Of a DNA stretch of 64,000 nt, positions 407 to 25,688 are shown piece after piece. The translations under genes and the position numbers were made by a program. Under the pieces are notes generated by a model. The model did no database searches. It was not told the origin of the DNA and saw only the letters and a program-made list of their open reading frames with translations. Numbering within the stretch: position 1 is the first letter of the stretch; every line of letters starts with the position of its first letter. The stretch covers positions 124,001 through 188,000 of IMG/VR virus record IMGVR_UViG_3300024308_000018. One strand, given 5' to 3'.

Positions 407-1662
407 TGCACTGCACGCTATTTGAACCACTTGACCGTGGAGCGATAGGCAGCCACCGCTGGCTGCGACGCCATGAGATCGGACGTATCGGCCAGCCGAA
501 CTATCGGATGTTCGAATACCTCCCACGGATCAGCGTTGGTCAAGCGCGCCGCATTGTCGACAACGTTAGACGTGCCCCCGCGTCTGGCCCATTACGTGAC
601 CAGCTGGCTGAACTGATTCGCCAAGGTCTGGGTGTCCCGCAAGATCTGGATCGTCTGGCTGAGCTGCGCGATCTCGACATTGCACGCGACCCTGAAAAGT
701 TGCAGGCACTCAACGCGTACCTTGACGGTCTCGACGCGTCAATCACAACGATGGAACGTTACATGAGCCCGTGGCCCTTCCTCCCCAGCGCTGACTGGGT
801 GGCAGCGACCATTGGGCACGAAGCATGGCCGTTCTTCCGGCGCGAAAAGCCGAAGGGTCAAAGCGTCAGCGTTCCGGACTACGCGGCGTATGGCATTCTG
901 ATCTACATGCAGGACGGCGTTGAGTCGAAGACGTACACGCTGTGCGACTCGTATGTGCTGAAGCGTAAAAACGGTGTGGTGGCAATCCCCACGTTGTTCG
1001 CGCACCAGCAGTCACCCAACGAGCTACCTGCGGGTGCCGACCGTGCCAAGACCAAGCGAACGTACACGATGCGCTCGCGTATTCGCGGCACCATCGACGT
1101 GACGGGTGTGATGAAGAGCGACCGGAAATATTTTGCACTGTTCGGCCTGTTCTACTTCCACGACCGTCCGGATCAGGCGCAGCTGTTGAACAAGGCATTC
1201 AAGGTGGACGTATATAAGAACCTTGAGTCCGATGTGTTCGGACAGCCTGAGCGTGTCCAGAAACTGAAAGCAGCGTTGGATGAACTGCGCCCGCGTCACA
1301 CGTTGGCCGCTGATTTCGTCGCACGTAACCGTGCCCGTGTCAGCAGCGGTAACCCGTCCGAAAAGTTGCTTGCATCGTTCGCACGTGCCGAAGCAGTGAT
1401 TGAAGAGTTCGACCGAGCCAGTCGGCGTTACCATGACGCCGCTGAGTCTGCGCCACGCAACTCGCCGATCCGTGACCTATCGTTCTACGCGCTTGACGTG
1501 ATGTTGCCTTCAACGTTCAAGCCGGAAGAGATTGAATGGAGACCTATCTTGACGGACAAGTACGCACGCGTCGCTGATAGGCTCTACGGCAACGACAAAA
1601 CTGTAAACAAGTCGCGTACCGTACAATTTTCCCTAACGCCGAAAGGCTCCCGAATCTGGTAA
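406..1662 (+). CDS. hypothetical protein (start reassigned from 301 to 406)
   Basis: AAGGAG RBS and TGATG coupling to the upstream gene; no family recognised. Confidence 0.7.
   Translation: MHCTLFEPLDRGAIGSHRWLRRHEIGRIGQPNYRMFEYLPRISVGQARRIVDNVRRAPASGPLRDQLAELIRQGLGVPQDLDRLAELRDLDIARDPEKLQALNAYLDGLDASITTMERYMSPWPFLPSADWVAATIGHEAWPFFRREKPKGQSVSVPDYAAYGILIYMQDGVESKTYTLCDSYVLKRKNGVVAIPTLFAHQQSPNELPAGADRAKTKRTYTMRSRIRGTIDVTGVMKSDRKYFALFGLFYFHDRPDQAQLLNKAFKVDVYKNLESDVFGQPERVQKLKAALDELRPRHTLAADFVARNRARVSSGNPSEKLLASFARAEAVIEEFDRASRRYHDAAESAPRNSPIRDLSFYALDVMLPSTFKPEEIEWRPILTDKYARVADRLYGNDKTVNKSRTVQFSLTPKGSRIW
1597..1617 (+). promoter_or_regulatory. repeated phage promoter-like box (AAAACTGTAAACAAGTCGCGT)
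   Basis: Matches the AAWCTGTAAAYA-N6-GT consensus; about 70 nt upstream of the 1674 gene. Confidence 0.55.
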
Positions 1663-1673
1663 GGAGATATACC

Positions 1674-4241
1674 ATGTTGATGCTCATTATTGCTAACACT
1701 GAAGGACGCAACGGCGTTGTGGGTGTTCGTCCCATTCAGTTCAACAACGCACGTCAGGCACTCGAAGCTGTAAAGGGTCAGCTCAAGATGCACGTTGCCA
1801 CCATCCATGCCGAAACCCTCAACATTGACGACACCATCCCGTTGGTTGTCGGCTTTGTTGGTCGGGGCAACGCCGCTGAGTCTGTCCTCGCTAATGTGAT
1901 GACGGCTCAAGGGGACAACACTGCCGCGTTCCTCGAACGCTGTGGCGTTATCGGCGCGTATCACGTCCCTGAGACCGACGACGCTGAAATTCTGGCTGGC
2001 TACACCGACGCGGTATTCAACAACCTCGCCACTTACCTGCCGACCGAAGAAGGCGCACCCGGTTCCCGCGAGCCGCTGGCCGTTGACGGTCTGGAATTTC
2101 TGGCGGGCGCACCGCTTAACGTTGTCGTCCATGCTGACGGCGCGCAGCTGGGCCGCCCGTCTCCCCTGCAACAAATCGGCGGCAACTCTTACGCCGAGCA
2201 GGAAGTTGAAACTGAAATCGAAACCCCCGTTGTGGCAGAAGCCCAACCTGTAATCCAATCCAAAATCGAAACCGAGGAAACTGTCATGACCGCAACCCAA
2301 ATGACCAAAGCTGACCTGATGCGTGCCGCTCGCCAGTTGCACGGCGATCTGTCTGTCGCCGTCCCCAACTTCCAGCCCATCGAGATCGCGTTCGGCGACG
2401 CTTCCCGCCTGCGCCGCTTCTGCGGTCTGAAGCTGACCAACATGGATCAGGCTACTCTGGACGAGTTGCAATCCCGCGCCGAAGAAGTTTGCCAGTGCCT
2501 GAAAGAGCTGGCCGCGCTGACTGCCACTCAAGATGACGAGCTGGAAGTCACCGCGCACGTAAGCGCTGGTTCCGACGATGACGACTTCGCTCCGGTTCCG
2601 GATCAGCAACTGGCTGATGATGACGACGAAGAGTTCGACGAAGTTGATACCGAAGTTGAGACCGACATCGAACCCACCGCTGATCTGGTTGCCGATGACG
2701 AGCTGCCTGTCGAAGCCGACACCTCTGCCGACGATCTCGACCTGAACGACATGACCGTGCTGGCCGAGAAGCTGCCCGCCGTGTTCCTGCTGACTCAAGG
2801 TCGTCTGGATGAAGTGGAAGGCGCGATGTCCGCCGTTTCCGAGTTCGCGGTGAACCTCATTACTGAGCAGGGCGGCGACTTCAACGACTTCAACGAATCC
2901 GACGTTGCTGAAGCCGTCGAGTCCGGGGAGCTGGTCAACGTCGTCACTCTGCTGGACGAATCCGACTGGCTGAACGCTGCCTCCTTCGACCTGCTGTACG
3001 AGCTGGACGGCGCACTGACTGATGCGGCGGCCGCTTCCGGTATCGACGTGCAGGGTGAAGTCGACCAGTCCGGTATCGATCTGGATACCGACGACGAAGA
3101 GATGTTGACTGACAACGACAACGACACCGACAACGACTGGGAAGAAGATGACGAAGAAGAAGACGAAGACGCTGAGCCCGAAGCTGATCTGCAAATGCTG
3201 CAAGTCACCATCGTTCCGCGTCTGGTTCTGAACCTCGTCGCCGACTACAACGGTCACGTCTACACCAAGGAGCAACGTCACGCTCTGATGGCGATGCCGA
3301 CCGAAAGCGGTCGTGTCCTGAACCTCGCTTACGGTATCTCCGGCAACGACAGCAACAACGGATCCCAAGGTGCTTACGTCCGTGCCATCGGCCGTACTGC
3401 CAAGGCGCTGGGCCAACTGGCGAACGCAACCGTGCTGCTGCCGTCCAGCTACGCTGACGTGACCGCCGACAAGCTGGCTGCTGCCGTCACTGCCGCCGCC
3501 ACTGGCACCGACATCAACGAGCTGCTGTCCAACGTGCTGGCCGACCTGCAAGGTATCGAGGTCGACGAAGAAGGCAACGTGATGATCGGCTTTGCCGACG
3601 ACGAAGGCGACGAGACCGAGCCGAAGATTGCACTGTCTGACCTGTGCGACTTCGACGTCAAGTACAGCATGATGCGTGAGCACGACTTCGGGCCTGCCAC
3701 CATCGAAGTTACTGCGCTGCTCAACATGCGTATGCCGATCCTTGGGTTCGCCAAGTACCCCGAGAAGATCGCCGCACGTCTGGCCTCGCTGGCTGACAAG
3801 CAGTTCGACCGTCACGGCGTTGACGTGTATCCGGCAATCACCTTCAACGCTGTTGATCGTATCTTCAACCGCACTGAAGAGTTCAGCGACCGCAACATCG
3901 CGTGCCTGCCGGAAGTGATCAGCGCGCTGATCGCACAAGTCAACGTTGAAGAGAGCCCGTGGGCTGGTGCAGTTGTCGCTACCCATCGCGCCGTGGTCGA
4001 AACTGGCGTGTACGGTATCGGCCTGCTGGTTGACGACTCCGAAGTCGAGCAGTACGTCCCGCTGCACGAAGTTGTCGACATCGACGCTTACGCCAGTGTG
4101 GGCAACGATGCCTGTGCCGTCCTGTGCACTCCCATCGGCGAATCCCTGTTCGGCATGGGCGGTGATACCACCATCATGCTGACCCGTGCCAAGGACGACT
4201 CCGAAGAAGAGGACGAGACCGAGCTGGACGACGCCGAGTAA
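1674..4241 (+). CDS. large, very acidic (D/E-rich) protein
   Basis: AAGGAG RBS; strong codon bias; long D/E tracts separating folded-looking segments. Confidence 0.85.
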   Translation: MLMLIIANTEGRNGVVGVRPIQFNNARQALEAVKGQLKMHVATIHAETLNIDDTIPLVVGFVGRGNAAESVLANVMTAQGDNTAAFLERCGVIGAYHVPETDDAEILAGYTDAVFNNLATYLPTEEGAPGSREPLAVDGLEFLAGAPLNVVVHADGAQLGRPSPLQQIGGNSYAEQEVETEIETPVVAEAQPVIQSKIETEETVMTATQMTKADLMRAARQLHGDLSVAVPNFQPIEIAFGDASRLRRFCGLKLTNMDQATLDELQSRAEEVCQCLKELAALTATQDDELEVTAHVSAGSDDDDFAPVPDQQLADDDDEEFDEVDTEVETDIEPTADLVADDELPVEADTSADDLDLNDMTVLAEKLPAVFLLTQGRLDEVEGAMSAVSEFAVNLITEQGGDFNDFNESDVAEAVESGELVNVVTLLDESDWLNAASFDLLYELDGALTDAAAASGIDVQGEVDQSGIDLDTDDEEMLTDNDNDTDNDWEEDDEEEDEDAEPEADLQMLQVTIVPRLVLNLVADYNGHVYTKEQRHALMAMPTESGRVLNLAYGISGNDSNNGSQGAYVRAIGRTAKALGQLANATVLLPSSYADVTADKLAAAVTAAATGTDINELLSNVLADLQGIEVDEEGNVMIGFADDEGDETEPKIALSDLCDFDVKYSMMREHDFGPATIEVTALLNMRMPILGFAKYPEKIAARLASLADKQFDRHGVDVYPAITFNAVDRIFNRTEEFSDRNIACLPEVISALIAQVNVEESPWAGAVVATHRAVVETGVYGIGLLVDDSEVEQYVPLHEVVDIDAYASVGNDACAVLCTPIGESLFGMGGDTTIMLTRAKDDSEEEDETELDDAE

Positions 4242-4281
4242 TTCTGTAAACGATAATTGTAGGGGCCGCAGTTTGGCCCCT
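4240..4281 (+). promoter_or_regulatory. promoter-like box plus hairpin
   Basis: AATTCTGTAAACGATAATTGT immediately followed by AGGGGCC-N7-GGCCCCT, with no U-tract. Confidence 0.65.
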
Positions 4282-4301
4282 TCTACTCCGAGGACAAATC
4301 A

Positions 4302-4856
4302 ATGCAACGTATTTCCCAAGTTGGTGCCATGATGGCAAACTTCGGCGAGCTGCTGACTACTATGTCGCACGCTGTTGAAGACGAAATAAACACCGCGATT
4401 CGCGACGAACAGGCGAGCGCCGCTGAACAGCTGAAGCGCACGGTTGACGACGCCAACGCCAAGATCACGAACCTCAATGCGACGAACGAGTCGCTGTCTA
4501 CGCAACTGCTGCGCAGCAACCAGCAACTCAAGGTTGCAGCCGACAAGCTGGCCGAGCTGGAAACCGAAGTCCTGCCGCTGGCTGCCATCGACGCCGACGA
4601 CGTGTTCGACAAGCTGGAAGAGCTGGACTTGGTTGTCGGCAAGCCTAACGGCGCTGGCGTGAAAGAGTCGCGCGAGCTTATCCAGAAAGTGTGCCGTGAC
4701 CTTGAACCGTTGCGTGCACGTTGCTCCCAAGAAACCCCGGCCCCGAAGCCTGCACCGAAACTTGCAGACGTTGCTGAAGCCGTGGGGAAAGCAAGCGGCG
4801 CTGCGGTCGCTAATGTAGAGGGCAACGCCGAGCCCGAGATGCCCGTCAAAGCGTAA
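4302..4856 (+). CDS. coiled-coil hypothetical protein
   Basis: GAGG RBS; heptad-like central helix. Confidence 0.8.
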   Translation: MQRISQVGAMMANFGELLTTMSHAVEDEINTAIRDEQASAAEQLKRTVDDANAKITNLNATNESLSTQLLRSNQQLKVAADKLAELETEVLPLAAIDADDVFDKLEELDLVVGKPNGAGVKESRELIQKVCRDLEPLRARCSQETPAPKPAPKLADVAEAVGKASGAAVANVEGNAEPEMPVKA

Positions 4857-4963
4857 TGGGCAATCAGCAAGTTTTATCATCATCGTTCGCAAAAGGTTTC
4901 GCGCTGAGCATTCTAATTCTTACGGCGCTGACTTCTGCACTGTCACTGGCTGCCCTAGCCTGA
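4856..4963 (+). CDS. 35-aa hydrophobic (single-TM) peptide, not in the ORF track
   Basis: TAATG coupling to the upstream stop; MGNQQVLSSSFAKGFALSILILTALTSALSLAALA. Confidence 0.5.
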   Translation: MGNQQVLSSSFAKGFALSILILTALTSALSLAALA

Positions 4964-4968
4964 CACCG

Positions 4969-4989
4969 AATTCTGTAAATAGTAATTGT
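4969..4989 (+). promoter_or_regulatory. promoter-like box
   Basis: AATTCTGTAAATAGTAATTGT upstream of the 5023 gene. Confidence 0.65.
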
Positions 4990-5022
4990 TAGTCCAACTC
5001 ACAACCCCGAAAGGAATATCGT

Positions 5023-5562
5023 ATGGCTATCGCCCCTAAGAAGAAGCAAGTTCGTTCTGACCTGATCCCTACCCGTACCAGCCGCCTGCACAACAAGAGC
5101 AGCGTTGCCGTCGGTGCTGCGGTCGCCAAGTTGTTTACCGTGCTGGTCACCTGCCGCAAGCCCGAGCAGTTTGCCGCCGTGCTGCTGAGCGACGATGACA
5201 ACAGCATCATGGTGCGCCGCAAGAAAGGCTACGGCTCTTCCAAGGTTCTGGAAGTGATGATCAGCAAGAGCGACGTTCTGGAAATCACAGGCGCTGGCGT
5301 CGGCCACGAAGCGATCATCCGCGCTGTCGGCCAAGTGCCCGAGCTGAAGCTGCCGCACCAGAAGGTCAAGAACGTTGCAGGCTGGTTGATCTGTACCGAC
5401 GCCGAGACTGGCGAGCAGACCCGCATCAACACCCGCGCCCAAGGCGTTGAAGTTTCTGTCGTCGGTGAAGACGTCAAAGAAGGCTCCGGTAAAGCCGCCC
5501 CGAAGACTGCCAAGAAAACTGGCAACGTCTCCAAGCTGCCGTCCCGCAAGCGCGAAGTGTAA
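5023..5562 (+). CDS. basic hypothetical protein
   Basis: AAGGA RBS; K-rich termini. Confidence 0.8.
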   Translation: MAIAPKKKQVRSDLIPTRTSRLHNKSSVAVGAAVAKLFTVLVTCRKPEQFAAVLLSDDDNSIMVRRKKGYGSSKVLEVMISKSDVLEITGAGVGHEAIIRAVGQVPELKLPHQKVKNVAGWLICTDAETGEQTRINTRAQGVEVSVVGEDVKEGSGKAAPKTAKKTGNVSKLPSRKREV

Positions 5563-5581
5563 GGCTACACTCCGTCCGCAA

Positions 5582-5666
5582 AAATCTGTAAACAATAATT
5601 GTTGGGAGCGCTGAGCACGGTGCTCCAGAATAAAACTGTAAACAACACAAGTAGGCAACACCGCCT
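5582..5666 (+). promoter_or_regulatory. tandem promoter-like boxes, each followed by a hairpin
   Basis: CTGTAAACAATAATTGT (5586) + GGAGCGC/GTGCTCC stem; CTGTAAACAACACAAGT (5636) + AGGC/GCCT stem. Confidence 0.65.
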
Positions 5667-5690
5667 CGTATCTATAAGGGAATTTCAGTC

Positions 5691-6488
5691 ATGGCTAAAG
5701 CTAAAACCGCAACCACCAAAACCTCCGCTAAGTCCAACAAAGCCGCTGCTGCTCCGGTGAACGCCGCAACTACTCTGCTGCATACCCTGTGCCAGTCTCT
5801 GGCTGCTGCCATTAGCGAAGACCCGAAGATCGCCAAGTTGGCTGATTCCTACGGTCTGGGTTTGGTCGGTGAGGTAGCCGACAACGAGGAAGAGGAAGAA
5901 CTCGAAGAAGAAGACGAAGAGTTCGAAGAAGAGGACGAGGAAGAAGAAGCTCCGAAGTCCAAGAAAGCCGCTTCCAAGAAAGCTCCCGCCAAAGGCGGCA
6001 AGAAAAAGAAAGCGCTGACCGCTGACGACATCATCGAAATTCTGGACGGCGACGACGCCGACGCTGCCGAGGCCGCATTCAACGATCTGGAAGACGAAGA
6101 CATGATCCGCGAGATCGCCGTCACCCTGAAGCTGGTCAAGGCCAAGGCCGCTGCCAAGACCGACGCCGACACCCTGACCGAGATGATCGGTGAGCACTTC
6201 GGCATCGGTGAAGAGGAAGAGGACGAAGAAGAAGAAGGCATCGACCCGGACGAGATGTCCGAAGCCGAACTGCTCGAATTCGTTATCGAGCACAAGCTGG
6301 CCACCAAGGTCAAAGCCAAGAAGATGGACGAGGACGAACTTCGCGCCCTCGTTGAAGAATTCCTCGAAGAAGAAGAAGAGGAAGACGAAGACGAGGAAGA
6401 GGAAGAGGAAGACGAAGAAGAGTTCGACGACGAAGAAGAGGAAGAAGAAGACGAAGACGAATTCGACGACGAGTTCGACGAAGAATAA
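5691..6488 (+). CDS. extremely acidic protein with poly-E/D tracts and two Rho-N/HeH-like helical repeats
   Basis: Three long E/D tracts; repeats DMIREIAVTLKL..KTDADTLTEMIGEHF and MSEAELLEFVIEHKL..KMDEDELRALVEEFL. Confidence 0.8.
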   Translation: MAKAKTATTKTSAKSNKAAAAPVNAATTLLHTLCQSLAAAISEDPKIAKLADSYGLGLVGEVADNEEEEELEEEDEEFEEEDEEEEAPKSKKAASKKAPAKGGKKKKALTADDIIEILDGDDADAAEAAFNDLEDEDMIREIAVTLKLVKAKAAAKTDADTLTEMIGEHFGIGEEEEDEEEEGIDPDEMSEAELLEFVIEHKLATKVKAKKMDEDELRALVEEFLEEEEEEDEDEEEEEEDEEEFDDEEEEEEDEDEFDDEFDEE

Positions 6489-6514
6489 TCTTCCTCCGGT
6501 CTGAAAAGTTTTCC

Positions 6515-6556
6515 AATCCGAAAACAGTAATTGATGGGGCGGCAAGTTCCGCCCCA
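6515..6556 (+). promoter_or_regulatory. variant promoter-like box plus hairpin
   Basis: AATCCGAAAACAGTAATTGA followed by an 8-bp TGGGGCGG/CCGCCCCA stem. Confidence 0.5.
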
Positions 6557-6596
6557 ACTTAACCCCCCCAAGCATTTAATTCTCAAGGAGCCTATC

Positions 6597-7115
6597 ATGG
6601 CTAAGACTACCGTTGTTGAAACCGCCCAGCTGTCCGCCCTTCAGAAAACTCTGAAGTCCCTGAAGTCCCAGCACGCCAAGGCCCAGAAGCAGCACGACAG
6701 CTCTGTCGCTGCCCAGACCAAAGCTCAGGAAATTTCCTCCCAGTCGCTGGCTGCGCAGGAACAAAGCATCGCTGAACTGGAAGCCCAGCTGCTGGCCGCC
6801 AAGTCCGGCGAAGCTGCTCCGGCACCTGCTGCCAAGAAAGCTCCGGCCAAAGCCGCAGCCGCCAAGCCTGCCGCTGGCAAGAAAGCTCCGGCCAAAGCCG
6901 AGAAGCCTGCCGCTGGCAAGAAAGCTCCGGCCAAAGCTCCGGCCAAAGCCGAGAAGCCTGCTACCAAGAAAGCCCCGGCCAAACCCGCCAAAGCTGAAAA
7001 GCCTGCTGCCAAGCCTGCTGGCAAGAAAGCTCCGGCCAAAGCTGCAAAAGCCGCTCCGGCCAAGAAAGGTAAAGGCAAGGGCAAAGGCGACGACCTCGAA
7101 TTCGATCTGGGTTAA
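6597..7115 (+). CDS. histone H1-like / AlgP-like DNA-binding protein (coiled coil plus PAKKA repeats)
   Basis: AAGGAG RBS before ATG 6597; N-terminal coiled coil; about 90 aa of K/A/P repeats; acidic tail DDLEFDLG. Confidence 0.85.
   Translation: MAKTTVVETAQLSALQKTLKSLKSQHAKAQKQHDSSVAAQTKAQEISSQSLAAQEQSIAELEAQLLAAKSGEAAPAPAAKKAPAKAAAAKPAAGKKAPAKAEKPAAGKKAPAKAPAKAEKPATKKAPAKPAKAEKPAAKPAGKKAPAKAAKAAPAKKGKGKGKGDDLEFDLG
6864..6937 (+). repeat. 35-bp exact direct repeat (39-nt period) in the H1-like gene
   Basis: AAGCCTGCCGCTGGCAAGAAAGCTCCGGCCAAAGC at 6864 and 6903; near-copy at 7011. Confidence 0.9.
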
Positions 7116-7156
7116 TCACCGCCGCGCAATGCCAGAGGAATAAACATCCTCGGATC

Positions 7157-7182
7157 AGGGGAGCAACGTTGCTCCCCTTTTT
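7157..7182 (+). terminator. intrinsic terminator
   Basis: Perfect palindrome AGGGGAGCAACGTTGCTCCCCT followed by a T-tract. Confidence 0.85.
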
Positions 7183-7216
7183 CTATTCTCTGCCTCACAA
7201 AACGGACTTCGCGAAC

Positions 7217-7779: not shown

Positions 7780-7788
7780 TGGTATAAT
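7780..7788 (+). promoter_or_regulatory. host sigma70-type extended -10 promoter (TGnTATAAT)
   Basis: TGGTATAAT in the intergenic region upstream of the 7821-gyrB-gyrA unit. Confidence 0.6.
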
Positions 7789-10237: not shown

Positions 10238-11911
10238 ATGACAACTAAGAGAGTGGTGCGCCGACCCAAGGCCACCAAAGCTGCGAAGTCGACAGCGACC
10301 GAGATAGAATCCGGCACGCTGGTGAAAAAGCGCAAGCCTCTGCGAGCCAAGGCCACGGCAGCAACAGGCGAGCGCGAGGTCGGCACCGAAGCCCAGCTGA
10401 AGATGTCGCTGACTCCGACCGTCGACACGTACATCGAAGACAAGGAACTGCATGAATACACCGACCGCGCACTGTTCGAGTACGGTTCGTATGTCGTGCA
10501 AGACCGTGCGGTTCCCGAACTGCGCGATGGCCTGAAGCCGTCACACCGCGCGATGTTGTGGTCGGCCGTTGAACTTGGCCTGAGCCCCAGCGGTAGCTTT
10601 GCGAAGTCAGCCAAGGTTGTCGGCCATGCAATCGGTTCGTATCACCCGCACGGTGACGTCGCGTGTTATGATGCGGGTGTGTCTATCGCAAACTTCAACC
10701 CGCCTCTGCTGTGGGGCTCCGGTAACTTCGGCTCCCCAGTTGACGCACCCGCCGCGATGCGTTATTCGGAAATGAAGTTGTCACGCTTCAGCCAACTGTT
10801 CATGGCTGACAGCGGATACCTCAAGGCCGTGCCGTATCACCAGAACTTTTCTGAGGATAAGAAGTGGCCCGTCTACATGCCTGCGCTGCTGCCTATGCTG
10901 CTGCTCGCTGGCAACCCGACGATTCCGGCCTACGGTGTACGCTCCGGTAACCCCAGCTTTGAACTTGCTGGCGTTGCCCAGCTGACAATCGCGGCGTTGC
11001 GTGGTCGCAAGATCACAGCCAACGACATGATCAAGCGGCTGGTGGTGCAGCACCCCTACGGCGCTGTATGTGTTGCCGACGACGAGCAATTCGAGACCCT
11101 TATCTCGACCGGACGCGGCTCACTGCCGTTCCATCCGCAGATGATGGCCGACTACAAGCGCAAGCTGATCGTGTTGCAGAGCTACAGCCCACAAGTGTTG
11201 TCGAATGCCGTGTCCGTCGAGAAGACGATTCGTGCAATCGCCGACATGAAGGGCGTGTCGCAAGTGATGTCGTCCGGCGGCAAGAAGAACCCCGACGCGG
11301 GCACCTATGGTTGCGCCATCGCAATCACTGTTGGCCGTGGCGTTGGGGAAGACGAGTTCTACACTCTGGTGCAAGCTATCCGCAAGCGCCTGACCAAGAA
11401 CGAGTCGTACCAGCTCGGCGTCACGATACGCAAGCTGGGGGAGAAGTCGAAGTTCAGCCACTGCGACTTCCCTGCGTTCATCAACAACTGGGCCAAGTAT
11501 CGGATCTCGTTGGAGGTGGACTACCTGAACTACTTCAAGCAGCAAGCGCTCGACGCGCTCCACGTTGTGAACGGTAAACTTGTGGTTGTCGCAACCAAGG
11601 ATTCCCTTGACCGCGCTATTCACATCATCCGCACCGCGAAGGATCCGAAAGCCGCGCTGATGAAAGAGTTCAAGTTGGATGAAGTCCAAGTCGAAGCCAT
11701 CCTGAGCATGCAGCTCCGGTCGCTTGCAAAGTTGGTGCTCGACGAGCTGAAGAATATCAAAGCCAAGCTGGTCGCGGAGATCAAGGACTACGACCGTCGC
11801 CTGAAAGAACCCGGCCAGTCAGCCGCCGTGGACTTGAAGGAGCGACTGAAGAAGTACCTTGCCAAGCCAGACATGACTGTAAGCGGATTGCCTGTCTACA
11901 CGAAGGAATAA
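10238..11911 (+). CDS. gyrA: type IIA DNA topoisomerase subunit A (GyrA/ParC-like), no C-terminal pinwheel
   Basis: RAVPELRDGLKP, YHPHGD and catalytic AAMRY motifs; only 557 aa. Confidence 0.95.
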   Translation: MTTKRVVRRPKATKAAKSTATEIESGTLVKKRKPLRAKATAATGEREVGTEAQLKMSLTPTVDTYIEDKELHEYTDRALFEYGSYVVQDRAVPELRDGLKPSHRAMLWSAVELGLSPSGSFAKSAKVVGHAIGSYHPHGDVACYDAGVSIANFNPPLLWGSGNFGSPVDAPAAMRYSEMKLSRFSQLFMADSGYLKAVPYHQNFSEDKKWPVYMPALLPMLLLAGNPTIPAYGVRSGNPSFELAGVAQLTIAALRGRKITANDMIKRLVVQHPYGAVCVADDEQFETLISTGRGSLPFHPQMMADYKRKLIVLQSYSPQVLSNAVSVEKTIRAIADMKGVSQVMSSGGKKNPDAGTYGCAIAITVGRGVGEDEFYTLVQAIRKRLTKNESYQLGVTIRKLGEKSKFSHCDFPAFINNWAKYRISLEVDYLNYFKQQALDALHVVNGKLVVVATKDSLDRAIHIIRTAKDPKAALMKEFKLDEVQVEAILSMQLRSLAKLVLDELKNIKAKLVAEIKDYDRRLKEPGQSAAVDLKERLKKYLAKPDMTVSGLPVYTKE

Positions 11912-11956
11912 AATCTGTAAACAGTAGTTTGAGAGGGTGGAGTTATTCACCCTCTC
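11911..11956 (+). promoter_or_regulatory. promoter-like box plus 11-bp hairpin
   Basis: AAATCTGTAAACAGTAGTTT then GAGAGGGTGGA-GTTA-TTCACCCTCTC. Confidence 0.6.
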
Positions 11957-12045
11957 CCTTCTCGTCTCGGGATACTAATTTCGTATTCCCCTGACGCCGC
12001 CCACTTGGGCACTACGTGTAACCACGTCCATAAAGGAAAGACCCG

Positions 12046-18504: not shown

Positions 18505-21500
18505 ATGACACGATCCAAGAAGCCGGATCTGACCGCGCGCCGCCGTTTGGTAGCGCGCCGTTCAGCCGCGACAGATTTCCTGATAGGTCTGGGTGGCGCT
18601 GACGCCGCCACAGACGATGCTGATATGGGCGTAGACATTGGTGATGCGCAAGGCGTCCCCAGTGAGATCGGCACTGCAAAGTCCATCGACATTCGCCAGA
18701 TTATCAAGCAAGCTCAGAAGACTCGTGTCCCCCGCGACTTGAAGTTCGACGACTCTTCTATGCCCGACGCTGCCAACTTCTACCGCTGGTGCACGGGCTC
18801 CGAATTCCTCAACGCCGAGCCATACCTTGAGCAGGTGCTGATCGGTGTACGTCTCTTTGGTGAATACTGCCCCATTTGCAGTGACACCGAGTGGATGAAG
18901 ATTGAAAACCATGAGCCGCAGGAAGGCTTGGCCGGAATGTTGGCTAAGGTGGTGCTGCTCGAACATGGCGTGTGCCCCAAGTGTAAGGGTCGCCGCTCTG
19001 AGTTCTTCCGCACCAACAAGCTCAAGTTCTACAACGAACTCGGGGTGAACGCCGGACAACGTTGTGTGACTGGTGACCAGCTGCTGTCTACTGGTGTCGG
19101 CCTGCGCCGCGTGCGTGACCTGCTGCCAGATGCAGAGTATGGCGAGAACGAAGTTGAAGGTCTGACCGCTGCCCTGACCGAGGGCCCTCTCAAGGTCAAC
19201 AAGATCGTGCGCATTGAAGCAGGTGAACGTCTGGTGTGTGCAACACTAGCCAACGGCACCGAGATCAAAGGCACCGCTACTCACGGCATCGAAGGCTGGG
19301 CCAAGAGCTACCGCCCGCTGCAAGACGCCGCCAAGTCTCCCGTGGTTATCGCCACCAATCACCACATCGGTGAGCCATTCCCAATTCGCGAGTACGCCGA
19401 AGGCATGGTGCGCCAAGGGGCCCTCCCCGAGAACTACAGCGCCAAGGCCATCCGCAACTACGCGATGATGCAGACAATGGCCCACGCCGTTATGGGTACG
19501 CTGCTCGTCCACAACAACGTTCCCTATGTCGAGGGCGGGCCAACACTTGACACCGTGTTCAAGTCGCTGACCGCTGGCTGCTACCGTGACAACAAGATGG
19601 TGCAGCTGCCCGACTACCTGTTGTCGAACGCTGCTCCCCTACTGCACACATTCTTCCGCACCCTCTTCCCTGACGACGAGATCGGCTTGTCCGTGATGGT
19701 CGACTCAGAGGAACTGGCGCGAGAGATTCAGGCCCTTGCCATTGCGTGCGGTTGGCCCTGCATGCGTGACGGTCACAGCCTTTGGCTCGACCAGTTGGCC
19801 TACAACGACTTCAGCGAGCTGCGCGAAACCGTGCTGCGCGTAGAACCCACTTTTTCAGCCGAGCGCTGGGATCGTGGGTCTCTTGCGTCTGCACTCGAAA
19901 ACATTGAGATCGACAGCCCCTTGTACTACCTCAAGCGGCTGGTCGACGGCGATTACGCGGTGTTCAATGCTGCGGTGGCCGACATCGAGCCCGAGGACAC
20001 TTGGACGTTCGAAGTCCCGAGCGGCCAGCGCTACATGATCGACAACATCGTGTGCGAAAACAGCGGCAAGTCCGTGGTGGTAGCAATGCTGTCCACGTAC
20101 ATGACGCACCGCGTGCTCAAGATGCAGAAGCCGACGCGCGTCTACGGTATCGGCGACAACCAGATCCTGCAAGGCACGTTCGTGGCCCTGACTCAGGCTC
20201 AGGCAAAGGACACGTTGTGGGAGCCGTACTTCGGCTACATCGTGGCGAGCCCTTGGTTCCAACGTTACCATGCGTTGATCAAGCGCTACGAATCCCTGTA
20301 CGGTGTCGAGGTGATGAAGATTCGGGACACGTTCGTTCTGTATCGCCATCGCAACCTCATTGTGTTCCCAGCGGGCCCCGACAAGCGTACCCTTCGTGGT
20401 CGAACTCGTATCTTCTACGCGATAGATGAAATCGGTTGGTTCGACAACGATGCGTCCAAGAACAAGATCAAGACAGGCGCTGCCGAAGTCTCGATTGCGT
20501 TGGAACGTTCGTGCCTGACTGTGCGGTCGGCGGAGGGACGGCTGGTCGCCAGTGGCAATGACATGTGCTACACGGCATATGGCTTCAACGTCAGTAGCCC
20601 GTCAGACTTCCGCGACAAGATCTGTGAGATTGTCCGGCAGGCTGAGACCAGTAACAAGATATTGGGTATTCATGCCCCGACGTGGAAGATGAACCCGAAC
20701 GTTACGCGGGAGATGCTGGAAGAAGAATTCCGCAAGAACCCGATAGCGGCGGCCCGAGATTATGGCGCGCAGCCGCCAGTGTCAGCGAACCCATTCATCT
20801 CGCCCGGTACGGTGGACGAGTGTATGCGTGACGTTGGCCGTAACGAGGTGGTCTACAACCAAGCTACCGACCGACGCAGTAATGGGATCTCGGTTGAGCG
20901 GACGGCCTACGGCAAGATCACCAAGATCAAGCAAGTCGACCGCCCCAGTGTGCTGGCGATGGATGCTGGGGAAACCAATAACAGTTTCGCGCTGTCCTGT
21001 ATGTCGCTGGTAAATGGTATCCCCAGCGTTGACCTGCTCGTTGAGATCATGCCGAGCCCCGGCGAACCGCTCAACTACACGTTGATCTTTGACCACATCA
21101 TTGTACCGATGATCAAGGCACGCAACGTTAAGGTGCTGCTCGCCGACCGTTGGAACTCCACGAAACTCCTGCAAGATGCGCTGGCCCTTGGGCTCGTACA
21201 GATTGCCAAGAAGTATTCGCTGAAGTACAACGACATGTGGGACGTCAAGAACCAGATGCAAGGCGGCACGTTCTCTTATCCACGTTCGCAGTTTGTGAAA
21301 TCCGTAATCGAGCTGCTGCACGATCAGGACTTGACCAACTACCCGGCATGCTTCGCCAACAAACCTGTCGAGCACTTCATGTACCAGTGCGTCACGATCC
21401 AAGATAGCCGCAATCAGGTTCTCAAGGGCGTGGGGCTCACCGATGACTTGTGGCGAGCAACAGCGTTGGCGGCCTACGGACTCAACAGTCCGGACTACGC

Positions 21501-21663
21501 ACCGTTTCTTGTAAATAGCCCTAACAGGCACATCGACCGGAACCCACAACGTCTCGGCGTTATTGGCAGTGCCAAAGCCGTCGGTACGGGCAGCGGTGCT
21601 CAGGCGCGCAGCGGAACGATTGGTAATTTCACAGCGGTACTCAGTTCAAGGAGAGCAAAATGA
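18505..21663 (+). CDS. terL: terminase large subunit, intein-containing
   Basis: Walker A reconstituted as AGQR|SGKS; Walker B YAIDEIGW; nuclease LAMDAG and DDLW; adjacent to portal. Confidence 0.9.
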   Translation: MTRSKKPDLTARRRLVARRSAATDFLIGLGGADAATDDADMGVDIGDAQGVPSEIGTAKSIDIRQIIKQAQKTRVPRDLKFDDSSMPDAANFYRWCTGSEFLNAEPYLEQVLIGVRLFGEYCPICSDTEWMKIENHEPQEGLAGMLAKVVLLEHGVCPKCKGRRSEFFRTNKLKFYNELGVNAGQRCVTGDQLLSTGVGLRRVRDLLPDAEYGENEVEGLTAALTEGPLKVNKIVRIEAGERLVCATLANGTEIKGTATHGIEGWAKSYRPLQDAAKSPVVIATNHHIGEPFPIREYAEGMVRQGALPENYSAKAIRNYAMMQTMAHAVMGTLLVHNNVPYVEGGPTLDTVFKSLTAGCYRDNKMVQLPDYLLSNAAPLLHTFFRTLFPDDEIGLSVMVDSEELAREIQALAIACGWPCMRDGHSLWLDQLAYNDFSELRETVLRVEPTFSAERWDRGSLASALENIEIDSPLYYLKRLVDGDYAVFNAAVADIEPEDTWTFEVPSGQRYMIDNIVCENSGKSVVVAMLSTYMTHRVLKMQKPTRVYGIGDNQILQGTFVALTQAQAKDTLWEPYFGYIVASPWFQRYHALIKRYESLYGVEVMKIRDTFVLYRHRNLIVFPAGPDKRTLRGRTRIFYAIDEIGWFDNDASKNKIKTGAAEVSIALERSCLTVRSAEGRLVASGNDMCYTAYGFNVSSPSDFRDKICEIVRQAETSNKILGIHAPTWKMNPNVTREMLEEEFRKNPIAAARDYGAQPPVSANPFISPGTVDECMRDVGRNEVVYNQATDRRSNGISVERTAYGKITKIKQVDRPSVLAMDAGETNNSFALSCMSLVNGIPSVDLLVEIMPSPGEPLNYTLIFDHIIVPMIKARNVKVLLADRWNSTKLLQDALALGLVQIAKKYSLKYNDMWDVKNQMQGGTFSYPRSQFVKSVIELLHDQDLTNYPACFANKPVEHFMYQCVTIQDSRNQVLKGVGLTDDLWRATALAAYGLNSPDYAPFLVNSPNRHIDRNPQRLGVIGSAKAVGTGSGAQARSGTIGNFTAVLSSRRAK
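19063..20061 (+). mobile_element. 333-aa intein with degenerate LAGLIDADG-like region
   Basis: Starts CVTGDQLL; block B GTATH; ends IVCEN followed by extein Ser; removal restores GQRSGKS. Confidence 0.9.
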
Positions 21664-21908: not shown

Positions 21909-21911
21909 GGC

Positions 21912-23822
21912 ATGGGAATCTCATTCAAGGCACAGAGCGATTTCAGAAATCGCGGCCCTGCGCCTGAATCGGGTGGTAAGCGGCAAGTTGGTGTGGCGTC
22001 TAGCGATGCCGCACTCAACAAGCTGGTGAAGACGATGCGCAACCGTGCGCGGCATGAGCAGTACAGTGAGCGCGTTGCGTCCACTTCTGCCGCTGGTGCT
22101 GGCTCCGGTAGCGCAATCGGCAATACCCAATTCGGCGCAGTGGCACTGGACATCGACGTTGATCCGTTGCTCGAAGGCATGGCCTACGACACGGATGACA
22201 AGTTCCTCTTCAACATCTACCGCGACATCTACAACTTCGATCCCATCGGCGGGTCGTTCGTAGACATGTTCAGCACGCTGCCTTATTCGGACTACACGTT
22301 CGGCGGGGCCAAGGATGCGTTGCTCGAACCGTACTACGAAACAAACGAGCGCCTGAAGATCGGAAGCATGCTTCCGGCAATCACTACCGACCGGATGGTG
22401 ACTGGTGCTCACGTGTCGTCGATGCTGTATAACAAGCAGCAGAAGAAATTCCTCGACCTCATGTGCCACCGTTACGATCACATCGACGTGTATCCCCTGC
22501 CGTTCAACAACCAAGACCCGATCTTGGAGTGGAACGTGCCGGAAGAAACGCGCACCGTGATGCAGCGCGACAACGATCGGATCAAACGCCTGCGCGAGTA
22601 CATCGGCAGTGATCTGTGCGCCAAAATCGACGGCGGCGAGAAGATTGAACTCGACCCGCTCGGCACAATCTGGCTGCCCCGTCGCCCGTACAGTACAGGC
22701 GCAGGCCAATCTGTGTACCGTCGCATCCTGCCCGTGTGGCTGATCGAGAAGAACCTGTACCGTGGCACGCTGATAGAAAGTGGTCGCCGCCAACGTGGTA
22801 TCCTTCACGCTCAACTCGGCGACGGGATGGAGTGGGAGCCCAGCGTTGAGGAACTGCAATACGTGACCGACTTGCTGTTGGCTGCGGATGCGGATCCCAT
22901 TGGTGCGGTAATCGCAACTCGCATGGGCGTGCAGGTGAACGAGTTCCGTCAAGGCGGCGACTTCTGGAAGATCACCGACATCTGGGACACCACCACGCAG
23001 TACAAACTGCGTGCGCTTGGTGCCAGTGAAGCCTTGCTGTCGGGCGACGCTACGTTTGCCAACGGCGAAACCGGAATGATGGCGTTTATGGAGAGCCTTG
23101 CGGCTTCCCGTAATGACCTGACCCGCCGCCTGTTCTACGAGAAGATCTTCCCGCTGGTTGCCGTTATCAACGGGCTGGCCGTGAACCGTAGTGGCAACGT
23201 GGTCAAGAAGTCTGGCATGATGAAGGGAGATGCGATGGACATCATGGAGCGCATGCAAGACGGCTCCAAGTTGTTTATCCCGACCGTGCATTGGACGAAG
23301 AAGCTGCGTCCGGAAAGCGATCAAGGTCAGATGGAAGCGCTGCGTGCGCTGACCGAAATGGGCGTACCTGTTCCGATCCGTGCTATTGCGGCGGCTGGCG
23401 GATACAGTCTGGATCAAATGGTTGGTGACCAAGATGAAAACTTGGCTATGCAGCGTAAGATCTACGACTACCAAAAGCGCAACGCCGAGCTGAAGAAGAA
23501 GTACGGGCCGAAAGAGGAAGGCGAAGAGGGCGGCGGTTCGTTCTCAAGCGCCGATCCGTTCGGTGGTGTACTCGGCGGCCAGCGGCGTCTCTCACTGAAA
23601 GACCGCGACTTCGGCCACCTCAGTGAGATGCACGAATACGGGAAGACGGGCAAGAAGAAATACCTGTTTGACCAACGTGCCGCCAACGACCGAGCCAACA
23701 ACGCGATCTACAAATCTGTAAAGACCATAGACAAGCAGGGAGCTAACCCTCTGCTGTCTAATGCTGCTGTTTCCCGCAAGGCAAGTCCGCGTGAGCAGCG
23801 TGCAATGCTCCGTCTGTATTGA
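21912..23822 (+). CDS. putative portal protein
   Basis: Size and position after terL; portal-like helical pattern (KLRALGASEALLSG...RNDLTRRLFYEKIF). Confidence 0.7.
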   Translation: MGISFKAQSDFRNRGPAPESGGKRQVGVASSDAALNKLVKTMRNRARHEQYSERVASTSAAGAGSGSAIGNTQFGAVALDIDVDPLLEGMAYDTDDKFLFNIYRDIYNFDPIGGSFVDMFSTLPYSDYTFGGAKDALLEPYYETNERLKIGSMLPAITTDRMVTGAHVSSMLYNKQQKKFLDLMCHRYDHIDVYPLPFNNQDPILEWNVPEETRTVMQRDNDRIKRLREYIGSDLCAKIDGGEKIELDPLGTIWLPRRPYSTGAGQSVYRRILPVWLIEKNLYRGTLIESGRRQRGILHAQLGDGMEWEPSVEELQYVTDLLLAADADPIGAVIATRMGVQVNEFRQGGDFWKITDIWDTTTQYKLRALGASEALLSGDATFANGETGMMAFMESLAASRNDLTRRLFYEKIFPLVAVINGLAVNRSGNVVKKSGMMKGDAMDIMERMQDGSKLFIPTVHWTKKLRPESDQGQMEALRALTEMGVPVPIRAIAAAGGYSLDQMVGDQDENLAMQRKIYDYQKRNAELKKKYGPKEEGEEGGGSFSSADPFGGVLGGQRRLSLKDRDFGHLSEMHEYGKTGKKKYLFDQRAANDRANNAIYKSVKTIDKQGANPLLSNAAVSRKASPREQRAMLRLY

Positions 23823-23830
23823 GGGTCGTC

Positions 23831-25503: not shown

Positions 25504-25516
25504 TCCGACCGGATTT

Positions 25517-25540
25517 AAGGGGGCCTTCGGGCCCTCTTTT
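25517..25540 (+). terminator. intrinsic terminator
   Basis: AAGGGGGCC-TTCG-GGCCCTCTTTT. Confidence 0.8.
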
Positions 25541-25668
25541 CGTTTCCAGACACGTCACTTGCTGTCTGAACCTGCTCGCGTCTAACTCCGCCGTGTACTG
25601 CGCAATGTACGTAATCAACAACATTGCACGCGAAGAGCGGGAGACGCTGTACGCACAGTTGCCGCCTG

Positions 25669-25688
25669 AATCTGTAAATAGTCTACGT
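25669..25688 (+). promoter_or_regulatory. promoter-like box
   Basis: AATCTGTAAATAGTCTACGT about 40 nt upstream of 25715, just after a terminator. Confidence 0.6.

What the first reader, a model, noticed from the sequence alone, without database searches (positions are those of the whole stretch)
1597..25688. Repeated CTGTAAA promoter box with a fixed-distance 5' hairpin: a candidate phage regulon
Seen: CTGTAAA preceded by an A/T-rich run lies just upstream of gene starts at 1601, 4244, 4973, 5586, 5636, 11915 and 25672, with a CCGAAAA variant at 6518 and another copy at 23716 near the end of the portal gene. In six copies positions +9/+10 after the box are GT (consensus AAWCTGTAAAYA-N6-GT). 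In five copies a GC stem-loop starts 10-13 nt after the box (4261, 5605, 5653, 6535, 11931). These stems differ in sequence and lack the U-tract seen in this window's real terminators. Knowledge: TGTAAAYA resembles the T4 gp55 late -10 element TATAAATA, and 5'-terminal stems protect mRNA from RppH/RNase E. Inference: a single-box phage promoter that starts transcription at a stabilising hairpin and drives the most highly expressed non-structural genes.
Basis: partly seen in the sequence, partly recalled or inferred. Interest (0 to 1): 0.78.

Follow-up and report, generated by a model that had tools for sequence, protein, structure and literature searches.

The report
Jumbo-phage promoter box, some with hairpins
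The repeated CTGTAAA box is real and is most likely the promoter signal that a whole family of giant phages places before its DNA-replication and other non-structural genes.

Summary
All nine CTGTAAA copies lie on the gene strand, and AWWCTGTAAAYA occurs 6 times against 0.01 expected.

The window is part of a ~230 kb jumbo phage related to Erwinia phage Yoloswag, Pseudomonas phages Lu11 and PaBG, and others. The same box (aaWWCTGTAAAYA) is the most enriched 7-mer upstream of genes in Yoloswag. It is always co-oriented with the gene and sits a median 47 nt before the start codon. It is conserved at orthologous sites in phages of 34-57% GC.

It lies inside short divergent intergenic regions and directly after canonical terminators. 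A pyrimidine/purine pair 15 nt from the box start fits a transcription start. It therefore behaves as a -10-type promoter, probably read by host RNA polymerase with a phage-encoded factor. The window's own genome encodes the clade's sigma homologue.

The genes served are mostly replication and nucleotide-metabolism genes, not late structural genes. Lu11's GenBank record already labels this sequence "putative middle/late promoter", so the box is not new.

The hairpin is real at four sites. It is conserved with compensatory changes and begins 0-3 nt after the predicted start. It is not a general feature of the box (3 of 37 and 6 of 68 copies in relatives), and its stabilising role is untested.

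The parts
1598..1609 (+). Box copy AAACTGTAAACA inside the 3' end of ORF 301-1662, 73 nt before the ATG of the 855-aa acidic protein gene (1674). Predicted start G1616. No hairpin.
   Evidence: Conserved in L022, L025 and L026, though it lies in coding sequence. No stable fold.
4240..4260 (+). Site A: extended box AATTCTGTAAACGATAATTGT directly after the stop codon of the 855-aa gene. Predicted start G4259. Precedes the 184-aa gene (ATG 4302).
   Evidence: Orthologous boxes in L014, L025, L026 and L022.
4261..4281 (+). Hairpin A (8 bp, dG -14.6), beginning 2 nt after the predicted start. No T-run.
   Evidence: In relatives the stem differs (GGGGCC / GGGGCCAG / GGGGCTGG / GGGGCGGTAAC) but starts at box+18 in all except L014, whose MFE fold adds outer pairs from box+9.
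4969..4989 (+). Site B: extended box AATTCTGTAAATAGTAATTGT, 50 nt before the 179-aa gene (ATG 5023). Predicted start G4988. No hairpin in any relative.
   Evidence: The Yoloswag orthologue gp321 (28% aa identity) is preceded by TCTGTAAATTGTAATTG.
5582..5602 (+). Site C1: first of two tandem boxes (AAATCTGTAAACAATAATTGT) before the 265-aa acidic protein gene (ATG 5691). Predicted start G5601.
   Evidence: The tandem arrangement is also present in Yoloswag. L025 has three tandem units.
5605..5626 (+). Hairpin C1 (dG -16.7, z -4.1).
   Evidence: Covariation in 6 sequences: 97.9% of cells paired, 3 pairs changed on both sides, 5 G-U cells.
5632..5666 (+). Site C2: second tandem box (TAAAACTGTAAACA), predicted start G5651, followed by a weak 4-bp stem at 5653-5666 (AGGC/GCCT) whose sequence is conserved.
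6518..6556 (+). Site D: degenerate box CCGAAAA, then CAGTAATTGA, then a hairpin at 6535-6556 (dG -16.5), before the lysine/alanine/proline-rich protein gene (ATG about 6597).
   Evidence: In relatives the CTGTAAA half is not conserved (CTGAAAA, CAGAATA..ACTGTAATTG), whereas TAATT(G/C) and the hairpin are.
7157..7186 (+). Canonical intrinsic terminator (stem plus TTTTTCTATTC) that closes the box-driven gene cluster 4302-7115.
   Evidence: the only + strand hit in 1-20 kb. Conserved in L015, and a similar one in L022.
11911..11956 (+). Site E: box AAATCTGTAAACA directly after the topoisomerase II subunit gene, then a hairpin at 11931-11956 (dG -19.1, z -4.3). Precedes the 474-aa gene (ATG 12046). 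A CTAATTT box lies at 11975.
   Evidence: L022 has the same stem with a different loop. Yoloswag has a box but no hairpin at the orthologous place.
23712..23760 (+). Box AAATCTGTAAAGA inside the 3' end of the portal gene, 103 nt before ORF 23819, followed by a stem-loop at 23728-23760 (dG -15.9).
   Evidence: Yoloswag has a box at a similar place after its portal gene (7731). Function here is uncertain because it is coding sequence.
25519..25545 (+). Canonical terminator (GGGGGCCTTCGGGCCCTC plus TTTTCGTTT) upstream of the 25672 box.
   Evidence: Read. The order terminator, box, gene matches 6 of 37 Yoloswag boxes.
25668..25680 (+). Box GAATCTGTAAATA, 43 nt before ATG 25715. Predicted start G25687. 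No hairpin.
1768..1774 (+). CTGTAAA inside the 855-aa gene without the A/T flank. Probably a chance or coding copy, not part of the regulon.
   Evidence: 9.7 bits.

Best explanation
The box aaWWCTGTAAAYA is the core, -10-type element of a promoter class specific to this family of RNA-polymerase-less jumbo phages (Lu11, PaBG, Y3, Yoloswag, AD1 and many uncultured relatives).

Proposed geometry. If transcription starts at the purine 15 nt after the C of the box, then TAAAYA occupies -12 to -7, CTG occupies -15 to -13, and an A-tract occupies -19 to -16. There is no -35 element.

Who reads it (inferred). Host core RNA polymerase is directed to it by a phage-encoded specificity factor. The clade's sigma-70-family protein, which the window's own genome encodes, is the obvious candidate. 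A second factor is not excluded.

What it drives. Mainly replication, recombination, nucleotide-metabolism and other non-structural genes, that is, a 'middle' class. In this window it drives the cluster of abundant acidic and basic small proteins at 1674-7115, and the genes at 12046 and 25715.

Strong copies. The strongest copies in the window add an A/T-rich TAATT just before the start G.

Hairpins. At four sites (4244, 5586, 6518, 11915) the transcript would begin 0-3 nt before a conserved G+C-rich RNA hairpin. This most likely acts as a 5'-terminal stabiliser of those few very highly expressed mRNAs.

Shown: motif, enrichment, orientation, conservation, position, RNA-level hairpin conservation. 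Inferred: the start site, the factor, the timing and the hairpin's function.
For: Enrichment and orientation:
- In the window, AWWCTGTAAAYA occurs 6 times against 0.01 expected, all on the gene strand.
- In the complete Yoloswag genome, CTGTAAA is the top 7-mer enriched upstream of ORFs: 33 of 73 copies in 4.5% of the sequence, p = 4e-25.
- TCTGTAAA is 31 of 31 co-oriented with the gene blocks.
- Box to ATG is a median 47 nt, interquartile range 40-64.

Positions that need a promoter:
- A lone minus-strand primase gene has the box in its 69-nt divergent intergenic region. Lu11 thyA is the same.
- 6 of 37 Yoloswag boxes, and window box 25672, follow a canonical terminator.
- DNA polymerase I keeps the box in 18 of 18 Erwinia-clade loci.

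Deep conservation:
- In 62 sigma-gene loci of 31-57% GC, CTGTAAA occurs 135 times on the gene strand and 8 on the other.
- There is a box at the sigma stop, upstream of the ssb-like gene, in most of them. This includes the window's own contig (L052).
- The orthologue of the window's 179-aa gene (28% identity) keeps TCTGTAAAT.GTAATTG.

Start signature:
- In 88 independent sites, position 14 is a pyrimidine in 72% and position 15 a purine in 81%.
- In Yoloswag position 15 is a purine in 29 of 37 sites, with C only once.
- In the window it is G in 7 of 9.

Factor:
- The clade encodes a sigma-70-family protein (PMC7412058; weak Pfam Sigma70_r2 match).
- The homologue in the window's contig is 43% identical, E = 8e-90.
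- Reviews say such sigmas 'likely' direct host polymerase to phage promoters (PMC7598289, PMC13282480).

Hairpins:
- The first pair falls at box+17/18 at sites A, C1, D and E in most relatives of the window's clade, with different stem sequences.
- There are 3 compensatory pairs and 5 G-U cells, which pair only in + strand RNA.
- No T-run.

Prior annotation: the Lu11 authors independently annotated CTGTAAATA 16-mers as 'putative middle/late promoter'.
Against: - No measured 5' end exists. The metatranscriptome contigs are shallow and may include DNA. They run across the box at 4244 (4199-4340 and 4162-4454) and at 4973, and so show no start there.
- Nothing links the sigma to this box rather than to the second box class (CTAATTT). 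In 25 of 62 loci the sigma gene is itself preceded by CTGTAAA. That fits a cascade in which another factor reads this box.
- At 6518 the CTGTAAA half decays in relatives while TAATTG and the hairpin persist. That element therefore has a function of its own.
- Hairpins are no more frequent after boxes than in control upstream regions.
- The fixed box-to-hairpin spacing could reflect duplication of one cassette rather than constraint. L025 has three tandem units.
Confidence: 0.6

Rival explanations
1. The box is an RNA-level signal: a cleavage site for a phage or host endoribonuclease that cuts polycistronic transcripts between genes. Where a hairpin is present, it protects the new 5' end.
For: - The box is A/U-rich, single-stranded and co-oriented with the genes, and often sits just after a stop codon.
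- Contigs from RNA libraries run through it.
- At 6518, TAATTG plus the hairpin is conserved without the CTGTAAA half.
Against: - Boxes sit in short divergent intergenic regions where no upstream sense transcript is expected: Yoloswag primase and Lu11 thyA.
- Boxes sit just downstream of strong terminators.
- The Y/R pair at a fixed distance and the tight distance to the ATG are promoter features.
- There is no Rfam match and no conserved RNA fold around the box itself.
Confidence: 0.1
2. The box is the binding site of a phage DNA-binding regulator (activator or repressor) placed next to otherwise ordinary host sigma-70 promoters. It is not the -10 element itself.
For: - The conserved block at the strongest sites is long, about 25 nt: GAATTCTGTAAATAGTAATTGTTAG.
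- The nearby topoisomerase operon uses an extended -10 (TGGTATAAT at 7780), conserved in L022 and Yoloswag. Host-type promoters therefore do exist in this genome.
Against: - No second conserved element such as a TATAAT lies at a fixed distance from the box (logos).
- Two-hexamer sigma-70 matches are absent from 1-20 kb, 0 against 5.5 expected.
- The box is strictly asymmetric and its orientation is tied to the gene.
- The core shrinks to TGTAAATA in distant relatives, the size of a -10 region.
Confidence: 0.1
3. The box is a promoter, but the hairpins have nothing to do with it. They would be 3'-end structures (weak or factor-dependent terminators, or 3' stabilisers) of the upstream gene, or barriers to read-through.
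For: - All four strong hairpins follow a gene end within about 45 nt.
- Hairpins are not enriched after boxes in general.
- A similar T-less hairpin stands without any box at 54150.
- Three are followed by a short TTCT.
Against: - There is no T-run, and none is selected for in relatives.
- The A/U-rich box lies between the stop codon and the hairpin, a poor design for protecting a 3' end.
- The stem begins at box+17/18 at four different sites in most relatives, although stem sequences change.
- In tandem arrays each box has its own hairpin.
Confidence: 0.2

Closest known systems
'Putative middle/late promoter' features in the GenBank record of Pseudomonas phage Lu11 (JQ768459; Adriaenssens et al. 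2012, paper not readable here)
   Same: Same core sequence: CTGTAAATATAAATAA at 147952-147967 and CTGTAAATATGTGATA upstream of thyA. Same phage clade (portal 40% identical). Same position upstream of genes.
   Different: That annotation is a prediction without experiments. The record shows 16-mers only. Here the box is shown to be family-wide, with a start-site signature, an A-tract and a TAATT discriminator in strong copies. A hairpin-bearing subclass is described.
Phage T4 late promoters (TATAAATA at -10, read by gp55 with gp33 and the gp45 clamp) (own knowledge)
   Same: A single -10-type box with no -35 element. The sequence differs by one base (TGTAAATA against TATAAATA). It is phage-specific and read by host core polymerase with a phage factor.
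   Different: The genes served are mainly replication and nucleotide-metabolism genes, not structural ones. The structural genes carry CTAATTT instead. The clade's sigma is a 340-aa sigma-70-family protein, not a gp55-sized one. No gp33/gp45 coupling was examined.
Extended -10 (TGnTATAAT) promoters of bacterial sigma-70 (own knowledge)
   Same: A -35-independent architecture with a conserved TG just upstream of the hexamer and T-12/A-11 retained.
   Different: TG lies one position closer to the hexamer (-14/-13). The hexamer TAAAYA lacks T-7. A true TGGTATAAT exists separately at 7780.
5'-terminal stem-loop mRNA stabilisers (E. coli ompA leader, T7 gene 10 leader) (own knowledge)
   Same: A G+C-rich hairpin with at most about 3 unpaired nucleotides at the predicted 5' end. 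It is found on the most codon-adapted genes.
   Different: The 5' end is predicted, not mapped, and no half-life data exist.
Lambda nut sites (boxA plus boxB hairpin) (own knowledge)
   Same: A conserved linear box followed at a fixed distance by a hairpin, on the transcribed strand.
   Different: In nut sites the hairpin sequence and loop are conserved because a protein reads them. Here stems and loops vary freely, and most boxes have no hairpin.

Membership tests
Lu11-type CTGTAAATA 'middle/late' promoter of the Lu11/PaBG/Yoloswag jumbo-phage clade | Core sequence CTGTAAA(T/C)A with an A/T-rich 5' flank | tested here: met
   The Lu11 annotated features read CTGTAAATA....
Lu11-type CTGTAAATA 'middle/late' promoter of the Lu11/PaBG/Yoloswag jumbo-phage clade | The genome belongs to the clade (shared portal, terminase, topoisomerase II, synteny) | tested here: met
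   Portal 46-55% identical to Erwinia/Dickeya phages and PaBG, 40% to Lu11. Topoisomerase II about 49% identical. Gene order matches Yoloswag.
Lu11-type CTGTAAATA 'middle/late' promoter of the Lu11/PaBG/Yoloswag jumbo-phage clade | Co-oriented with the downstream gene and a few tens of nt upstream of it, genome-wide | tested here: met
   Window: 9 of 9 on the + strand and 43-131 nt to the ATG. Yoloswag: 31 of 31 co-oriented and median 47 nt. 62 loci: 135 against 8.
Lu11-type CTGTAAATA 'middle/late' promoter of the Lu11/PaBG/Yoloswag jumbo-phage clade | The genome encodes the clade's sigma-70-family factor | tested here: met
   L052 on the window's own contig, 43% identity over residues 6-344, E = 8e-90.
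Lu11-type CTGTAAATA 'middle/late' promoter of the Lu11/PaBG/Yoloswag jumbo-phage clade | Transcription initiates downstream of the box, at middle or late times | not testable with these tools
   Only shallow metatranscriptome contigs were available. No infection time course exists for any clade member in the searched literature.
T4-type late promoter | Exact TATAAATA box | tested here: not met
   G instead of A at the second position in every copy.
T4-type late promoter | Drives late (virion structural) genes | tested here: not met
   No box occurs in the window's 26-62 kb structural block. In Yoloswag the boxes precede DNA polymerase, clamp loader, primase, SSB, ThyA and sigma.
T4-type late promoter | Recognised by a gp55-like factor with gp33 and the sliding clamp | not tested
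   Only a sigma-70-family homologue was identified.
Intrinsic (rho-independent) terminator | G+C-rich stem-loop followed by a T-run | tested here: not met
   None of the box-associated hairpins passes the scan, whereas 7157-7186 does. Tails read TTCTAC, AGAATA, AACTTA and CCTTCT.
5'-terminal mRNA stabiliser hairpin | Stable stem-loop conserved as an RNA structure on the sense strand | tested here: met
   dG -14.6 to -19.1. Position conserved with different stems. 3 compensatory pairs and 5 G-U cells.
5'-terminal mRNA stabiliser hairpin | Stem begins within about 0-4 nt of the real 5' end and prolongs mRNA half-life | not testable with these tools
   The 5' end is only predicted from the Y/R signature at box+14/+15.
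Lambda-type nut site | Hairpin sequence and loop conserved for protein recognition | tested here: not met
   Stems and loops differ between sites and between orthologues.

The most novel reading that the evidence does not exclude
The box, TAATT-G and hairpin together form a portable high-expression cassette: a clade-specific promoter fused to a 5'-terminal stabiliser. It would duplicate in tandem, with two units in the window and Yoloswag and three in L025, to tune the output of a few very abundant acidic and histone-like proteins. It would sit within a three-tier promoter code for a whole jumbo-phage family: an extended -10 host-type class, then CTGTAAAYA, then CTAATTT. The persistence of TAATTG plus hairpin without the box at 6518 would then mean that the hairpin module is also read on its own, for example by an RNA-binding or processing factor.
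Probability: 0.2. Interest if true: 0.55.

Novelty: new member of a known kind. Interest (0 to 1): 0.4.

Why it matters
Jumbo phages without their own RNA polymerase are thought to reprogram host polymerase with their own sigma factors. For this large clade, which infects Erwinia, Dickeya, Pseudomonas, Yersinia and many uncultured hosts, no promoter has been tested.

A sharply defined box that is conserved across the family, with a predicted start site, gives a direct handle for several things:
- in vitro transcription with the phage sigma;
- annotation of temporal gene classes in metagenomic jumbo phages;
- compact phage-specific expression parts.

The hairpin-bearing copies offer a natural test case for 5' stabilisers in phage mRNAs. 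The gain is in scope and precision, not in kind.

Tried and rejected
- RNA evidence. Four metatranscriptome runs were laid on 1500-7400. Only shallow contigs were kept, some from relatives at 90-95% identity. They cross the boxes and give no ends. One contig starts at 4199 behind an adapter remnant, upstream of the box. This is not decisive, and only one read-laying run was allowed.
- A scan of viral contigs for the 20-nt extended motif found only the window's own contig with several copies. The other ten hits were single chance matches.
- Near-identity DNA search against phages found nothing useful. tblastn of the 855-aa protein had no hit.
- lux/cep-box similarity was suggested by a literature hit on CTGTAAA. 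It was rejected because there is no CTG-N10-CAG dyad.
- TAATTG as an independent second promoter box was rejected for the window. Its four + strand copies all follow the box, and its four - strand copies are scattered in coding sequence.
- TGnTATAAT as a general early class is not enriched in Yoloswag, with 8 copies of which half are mis-oriented.
- Hairpin as a general promoter feature was rejected.
- Rfam and tRNA scans found nothing.
- The Lu11 paper (PMC3372202) is not held, so only its GenBank features could be read.
- A single-protein search with Yoloswag DNA polymerase reached only the Erwinia clade, not the window's genome.

Full report
**What the window is.** The window has 57% G+C, and nearly all genes are on the + strand up to 62 kb.
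- It encodes topoisomerase II subunits, a DnaB-like helicase, a 1052-aa large terminase, a portal, baseplate and tail proteins.
- The portal and topoisomerase are about 50% identical to those of Erwinia jumbo phages (Yoloswag, Y3, the pEa_SNUABM series), Dickeya AD1/JA29 and Yersinia fHe-Yen9-02. They are more distant from Pseudomonas PaBG and Lu11.
- The window is positions 124001-188000 of a 229,746-bp viral contig, IMGVR_UViG_3300024308_000018.
- Near-identical DNA occurs in subsurface, wastewater, food and bird metagenomes.

**Checking the observation.**
- CTGTAAA occurs nine times, always on the + strand.
- Eight copies have an A-W-W flank. The ninth (1768) lies inside a gene without the flank and is probably chance.
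- AWWCTGTAAAYA occurs six times against 0.01 expected.
- 'GT' at +9/+10 holds in six copies.
- Strong stem-loops begin 10-11 nt after the box at 4261, 5605, 6535 and 11931. The one at 5653 has only 4 bp. An unlisted one follows 23716.
- None has a T-run, unlike the true terminators at 7157, 25519, about 29520, 53240 and 58940.

**The same box in relatives.** Close relatives of the window phage were found through the 179-aa protein (L014, L015, L022-L027; 64-92% protein identity). They keep the box at each orthologous place: before the 855-aa gene and at sites A, B, C1, C2 and E.

Yoloswag proteins are only 28-50% identical, yet Yoloswag has the box at the syntenic intergenic sites.
- Its tandem pair has a hairpin between the two boxes.
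- The orthologue of the 179-aa gene is preceded by TCTGTAAATTGTAATTG, against the window's TCTGTAAATAGTAATTG.

I fetched the whole Yoloswag genome.
- An unbiased count shows CTGTAAA as the most enriched 7-mer in the 90 nt upstream of ORFs: 33 of 73 copies in 4.5% of the sequence, p = 4e-25.
- TCTGTAAA is co-oriented with the gene blocks in 31 of 31 cases.
- The distance to the start codon has a median of 47 nt.

Sixty-two loci around the clade's sigma gene, from phages of 31-57% G+C, carry 135 copies on the gene strand and 8 on the other.
- One copy is conserved at the sigma stop codon, just upstream of the ssb-like gene. It sits sometimes inside and sometimes after the coding sequence, so it is not a coding constraint.
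- The core that survives in the most distant members is TGTAAATA. The PaBG subclade has CTGT(T/C)AATA.

**Promoter or something else.** Three arrangements argue for initiation rather than RNA processing.
- In Yoloswag the primase gene is a lone minus-strand gene among plus-strand genes. Its 69-nt divergent intergenic region holds the box in the minus orientation, 54 nt before the ATG and 17 nt from the start codon of the divergent gene.
- In Lu11 the box upstream of thyA also lies in a 94-nt divergent region.
- Six of 37 Yoloswag boxes lie 4-62 nt after a canonical hairpin-plus-T-run terminator. DNA polymerase I keeps this order in 18 of 18 Erwinia-clade loci. In the window, box 25672 follows the terminator at 25519-25545.

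**Start-site signature.** The logos show no second conserved element, but they do show a start-site signature.
- In 88 independent sites, the position 14 nt after the C is a pyrimidine in 72%. Position 15 is a purine in 81%.
- In Yoloswag the purine frequency at position 15 is 29 of 37, with C only once.
- With that start, TAAAYA is at -12 to -7 and CTG at -15 to -13, preceded by an A-tract. This is a -10-only promoter.
- The strongest window copies add TAATT at -5 to -1, and weaker T/A preferences are seen there family-wide.

**Which factor.** The clade has no RNA polymerase of its own but encodes a sigma-70-family protein (PaBG paper PMC7412058).
- Yoloswag gp237 gives a weak Sigma70_r2 match.
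- Its homologue lies on the window's own contig about 42 kb upstream of the window (L052). There is a box 62 nt before the ORF that precedes it, and another after its stop codon.
- Reviews state that such sigmas 'likely' direct host polymerase to phage promoters.
- Whether this sigma reads CTGTAAAYA or the second box class is open.

**Gene class.** In Yoloswag the box precedes DNA polymerase I, clamp loader, primase, SSB, the sigma gene, ThyA, a ParB-like gene, Dam and many small genes. It is rare in the structural block. Structural genes such as the tail sheath carry CTAATTT 28-50 nt before the ATG instead (16 of 23 copies upstream of ORFs, p = 5e-17). The analogy with T4 late promoters therefore holds for sequence and architecture but not for the genes served.

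**The hairpins.** In the window's clade the stems at sites A, C1, D and E start at box+17/18 in most relatives, while their sequences change. Site A, for example, reads GGGGCC, GGGGCCAG, GGGGCTGG and GGGGCGGTAAC in different relatives.
- For C1, six sequences give 97.9% paired cells, three pairs changed on both sides and five G-U cells. These would be A-C mismatches on the other strand, so the structure acts in + strand RNA.
- With the predicted start, only 0-3 nt precede the stem. That is the geometry of known 5' stabilisers.

Four facts limit this reading.
- The hairpin is not a general companion of the box: 3 of 37 in Yoloswag against 11% in controls, and 6 of 68 in other relatives.
- At site D the CTGTAAA half is not conserved in relatives, while TAATT(G/C) and the hairpin are.
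- L025 has three tandem box-hairpin units. The constant spacing may therefore partly reflect duplication of one cassette.
- All hairpin sites follow a gene end, which keeps a 3'-end function possible.

**Prior knowledge and novelty.** Literature searches found no paper describing the motif. However, the Lu11 GenBank record carries 'putative middle/late promoter' features whose sequence is CTGTAAATA plus 7 nt. The Y3 record has none. The box is therefore a new member of a predicted but never tested promoter class. New here are its family-wide conservation, the start-site signature, the separation from a second box class, and the conserved hairpin subclass.

**Verdict.** The promoter-regulon reading is well supported by comparative evidence, at about 0.8 for 'promoter' alone. 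The coupled 5' stabiliser hairpin is plausible for four sites but unproven and not general. Interest is moderate.

Noticed in passing
window 11976, 21624, 28160, 29495, 36240, 47438, 48764, 50024, 60565 (all + strand); Yoloswag genome-wide: A second box class, (G/C)TAATTT. In Yoloswag, CTAATTT is the second most enriched upstream 7-mer (16 of 23, p = 5e-17) and lies 28-50 nt before structural-gene starts such as the tail sheath. In the window TAATTT is 9 of 9 on the gene strand, and three copies lie 32-37 nt before an ATG (21660, 36271, 60598). It is a candidate late promoter. The total count in the window is not above chance (9 against 8.8).
   Followed up: partly
window 7780-7788; L022 about 12893; Yoloswag L016 about 11878: A perfect extended -10 (TGGTATAAT; TGCTATAAT in Yoloswag) is conserved 41 nt before the small gene that heads the topoisomerase II operon. 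It is probably a host sigma-70 promoter. Two-hexamer sigma-70 matches are otherwise absent from 1-20 kb, 0 against 5.5 +/- 2.4 expected.
   Followed up: partly
window 1674-4241, 5691-6488, 6597-7115: The box-driven genes encode unusual proteins with no Pfam match. One is 855 aa and acidic (pI 4.1, 20% D+E). One is 265 aa with 38% D+E in long runs plus a lysine-rich segment. One is about 172 aa with 60% A+K+P in AKKPA-type repeats, resembling histone H1 or AlgP. They are among the most codon-adapted genes in the window.
   Followed up: no
L025 7243-7390: One relative has three tandem box-plus-hairpin units before the acidic-protein gene, where the window has two. The unit therefore duplicates.
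   Followed up: partly
window 4856-4963: A 35-aa ORF with a hydrophobic C-terminal half (…ILILTALTSALSLAALA). Its start overlaps the stop of the 184-aa gene and it ends 10 nt before box B. It may be a small membrane peptide.
   Followed up: no
window 13475-13999: An ORF with an HNH-endonuclease match (phrog_8048, E = 7.5e-5) lies between the 474-aa gene and the third topoisomerase-like gene. It has low coding score and may be a homing-endonuclease insertion.
   Followed up: no
window 18505-21663: The large terminase is 1052 aa, against 937 aa in Yoloswag, and matches its PHROG profile in two stretches. It may carry an insertion. Inteins are annotated elsewhere in Yoloswag.
   Followed up: no
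window 54150-54170: A G+C-rich hairpin (GTGGGGGCACGTCCCCCAC) without a T-run and without any box, between two + strand genes and followed by CTTCTAAGG. T-less hairpins therefore also occur on their own.
   Followed up: no
sigma loci L057, L058, L061, L071 (PaBG subclade): At the conserved site after the sigma gene these phages have CTGTTAATA or CTGTCAATA instead of CTGTAAATA. Other distant members have GTGTAAATA or TTGTAAATA. The invariant core is TGTAAATA-like and one subclade has shifted it.
   Followed up: no
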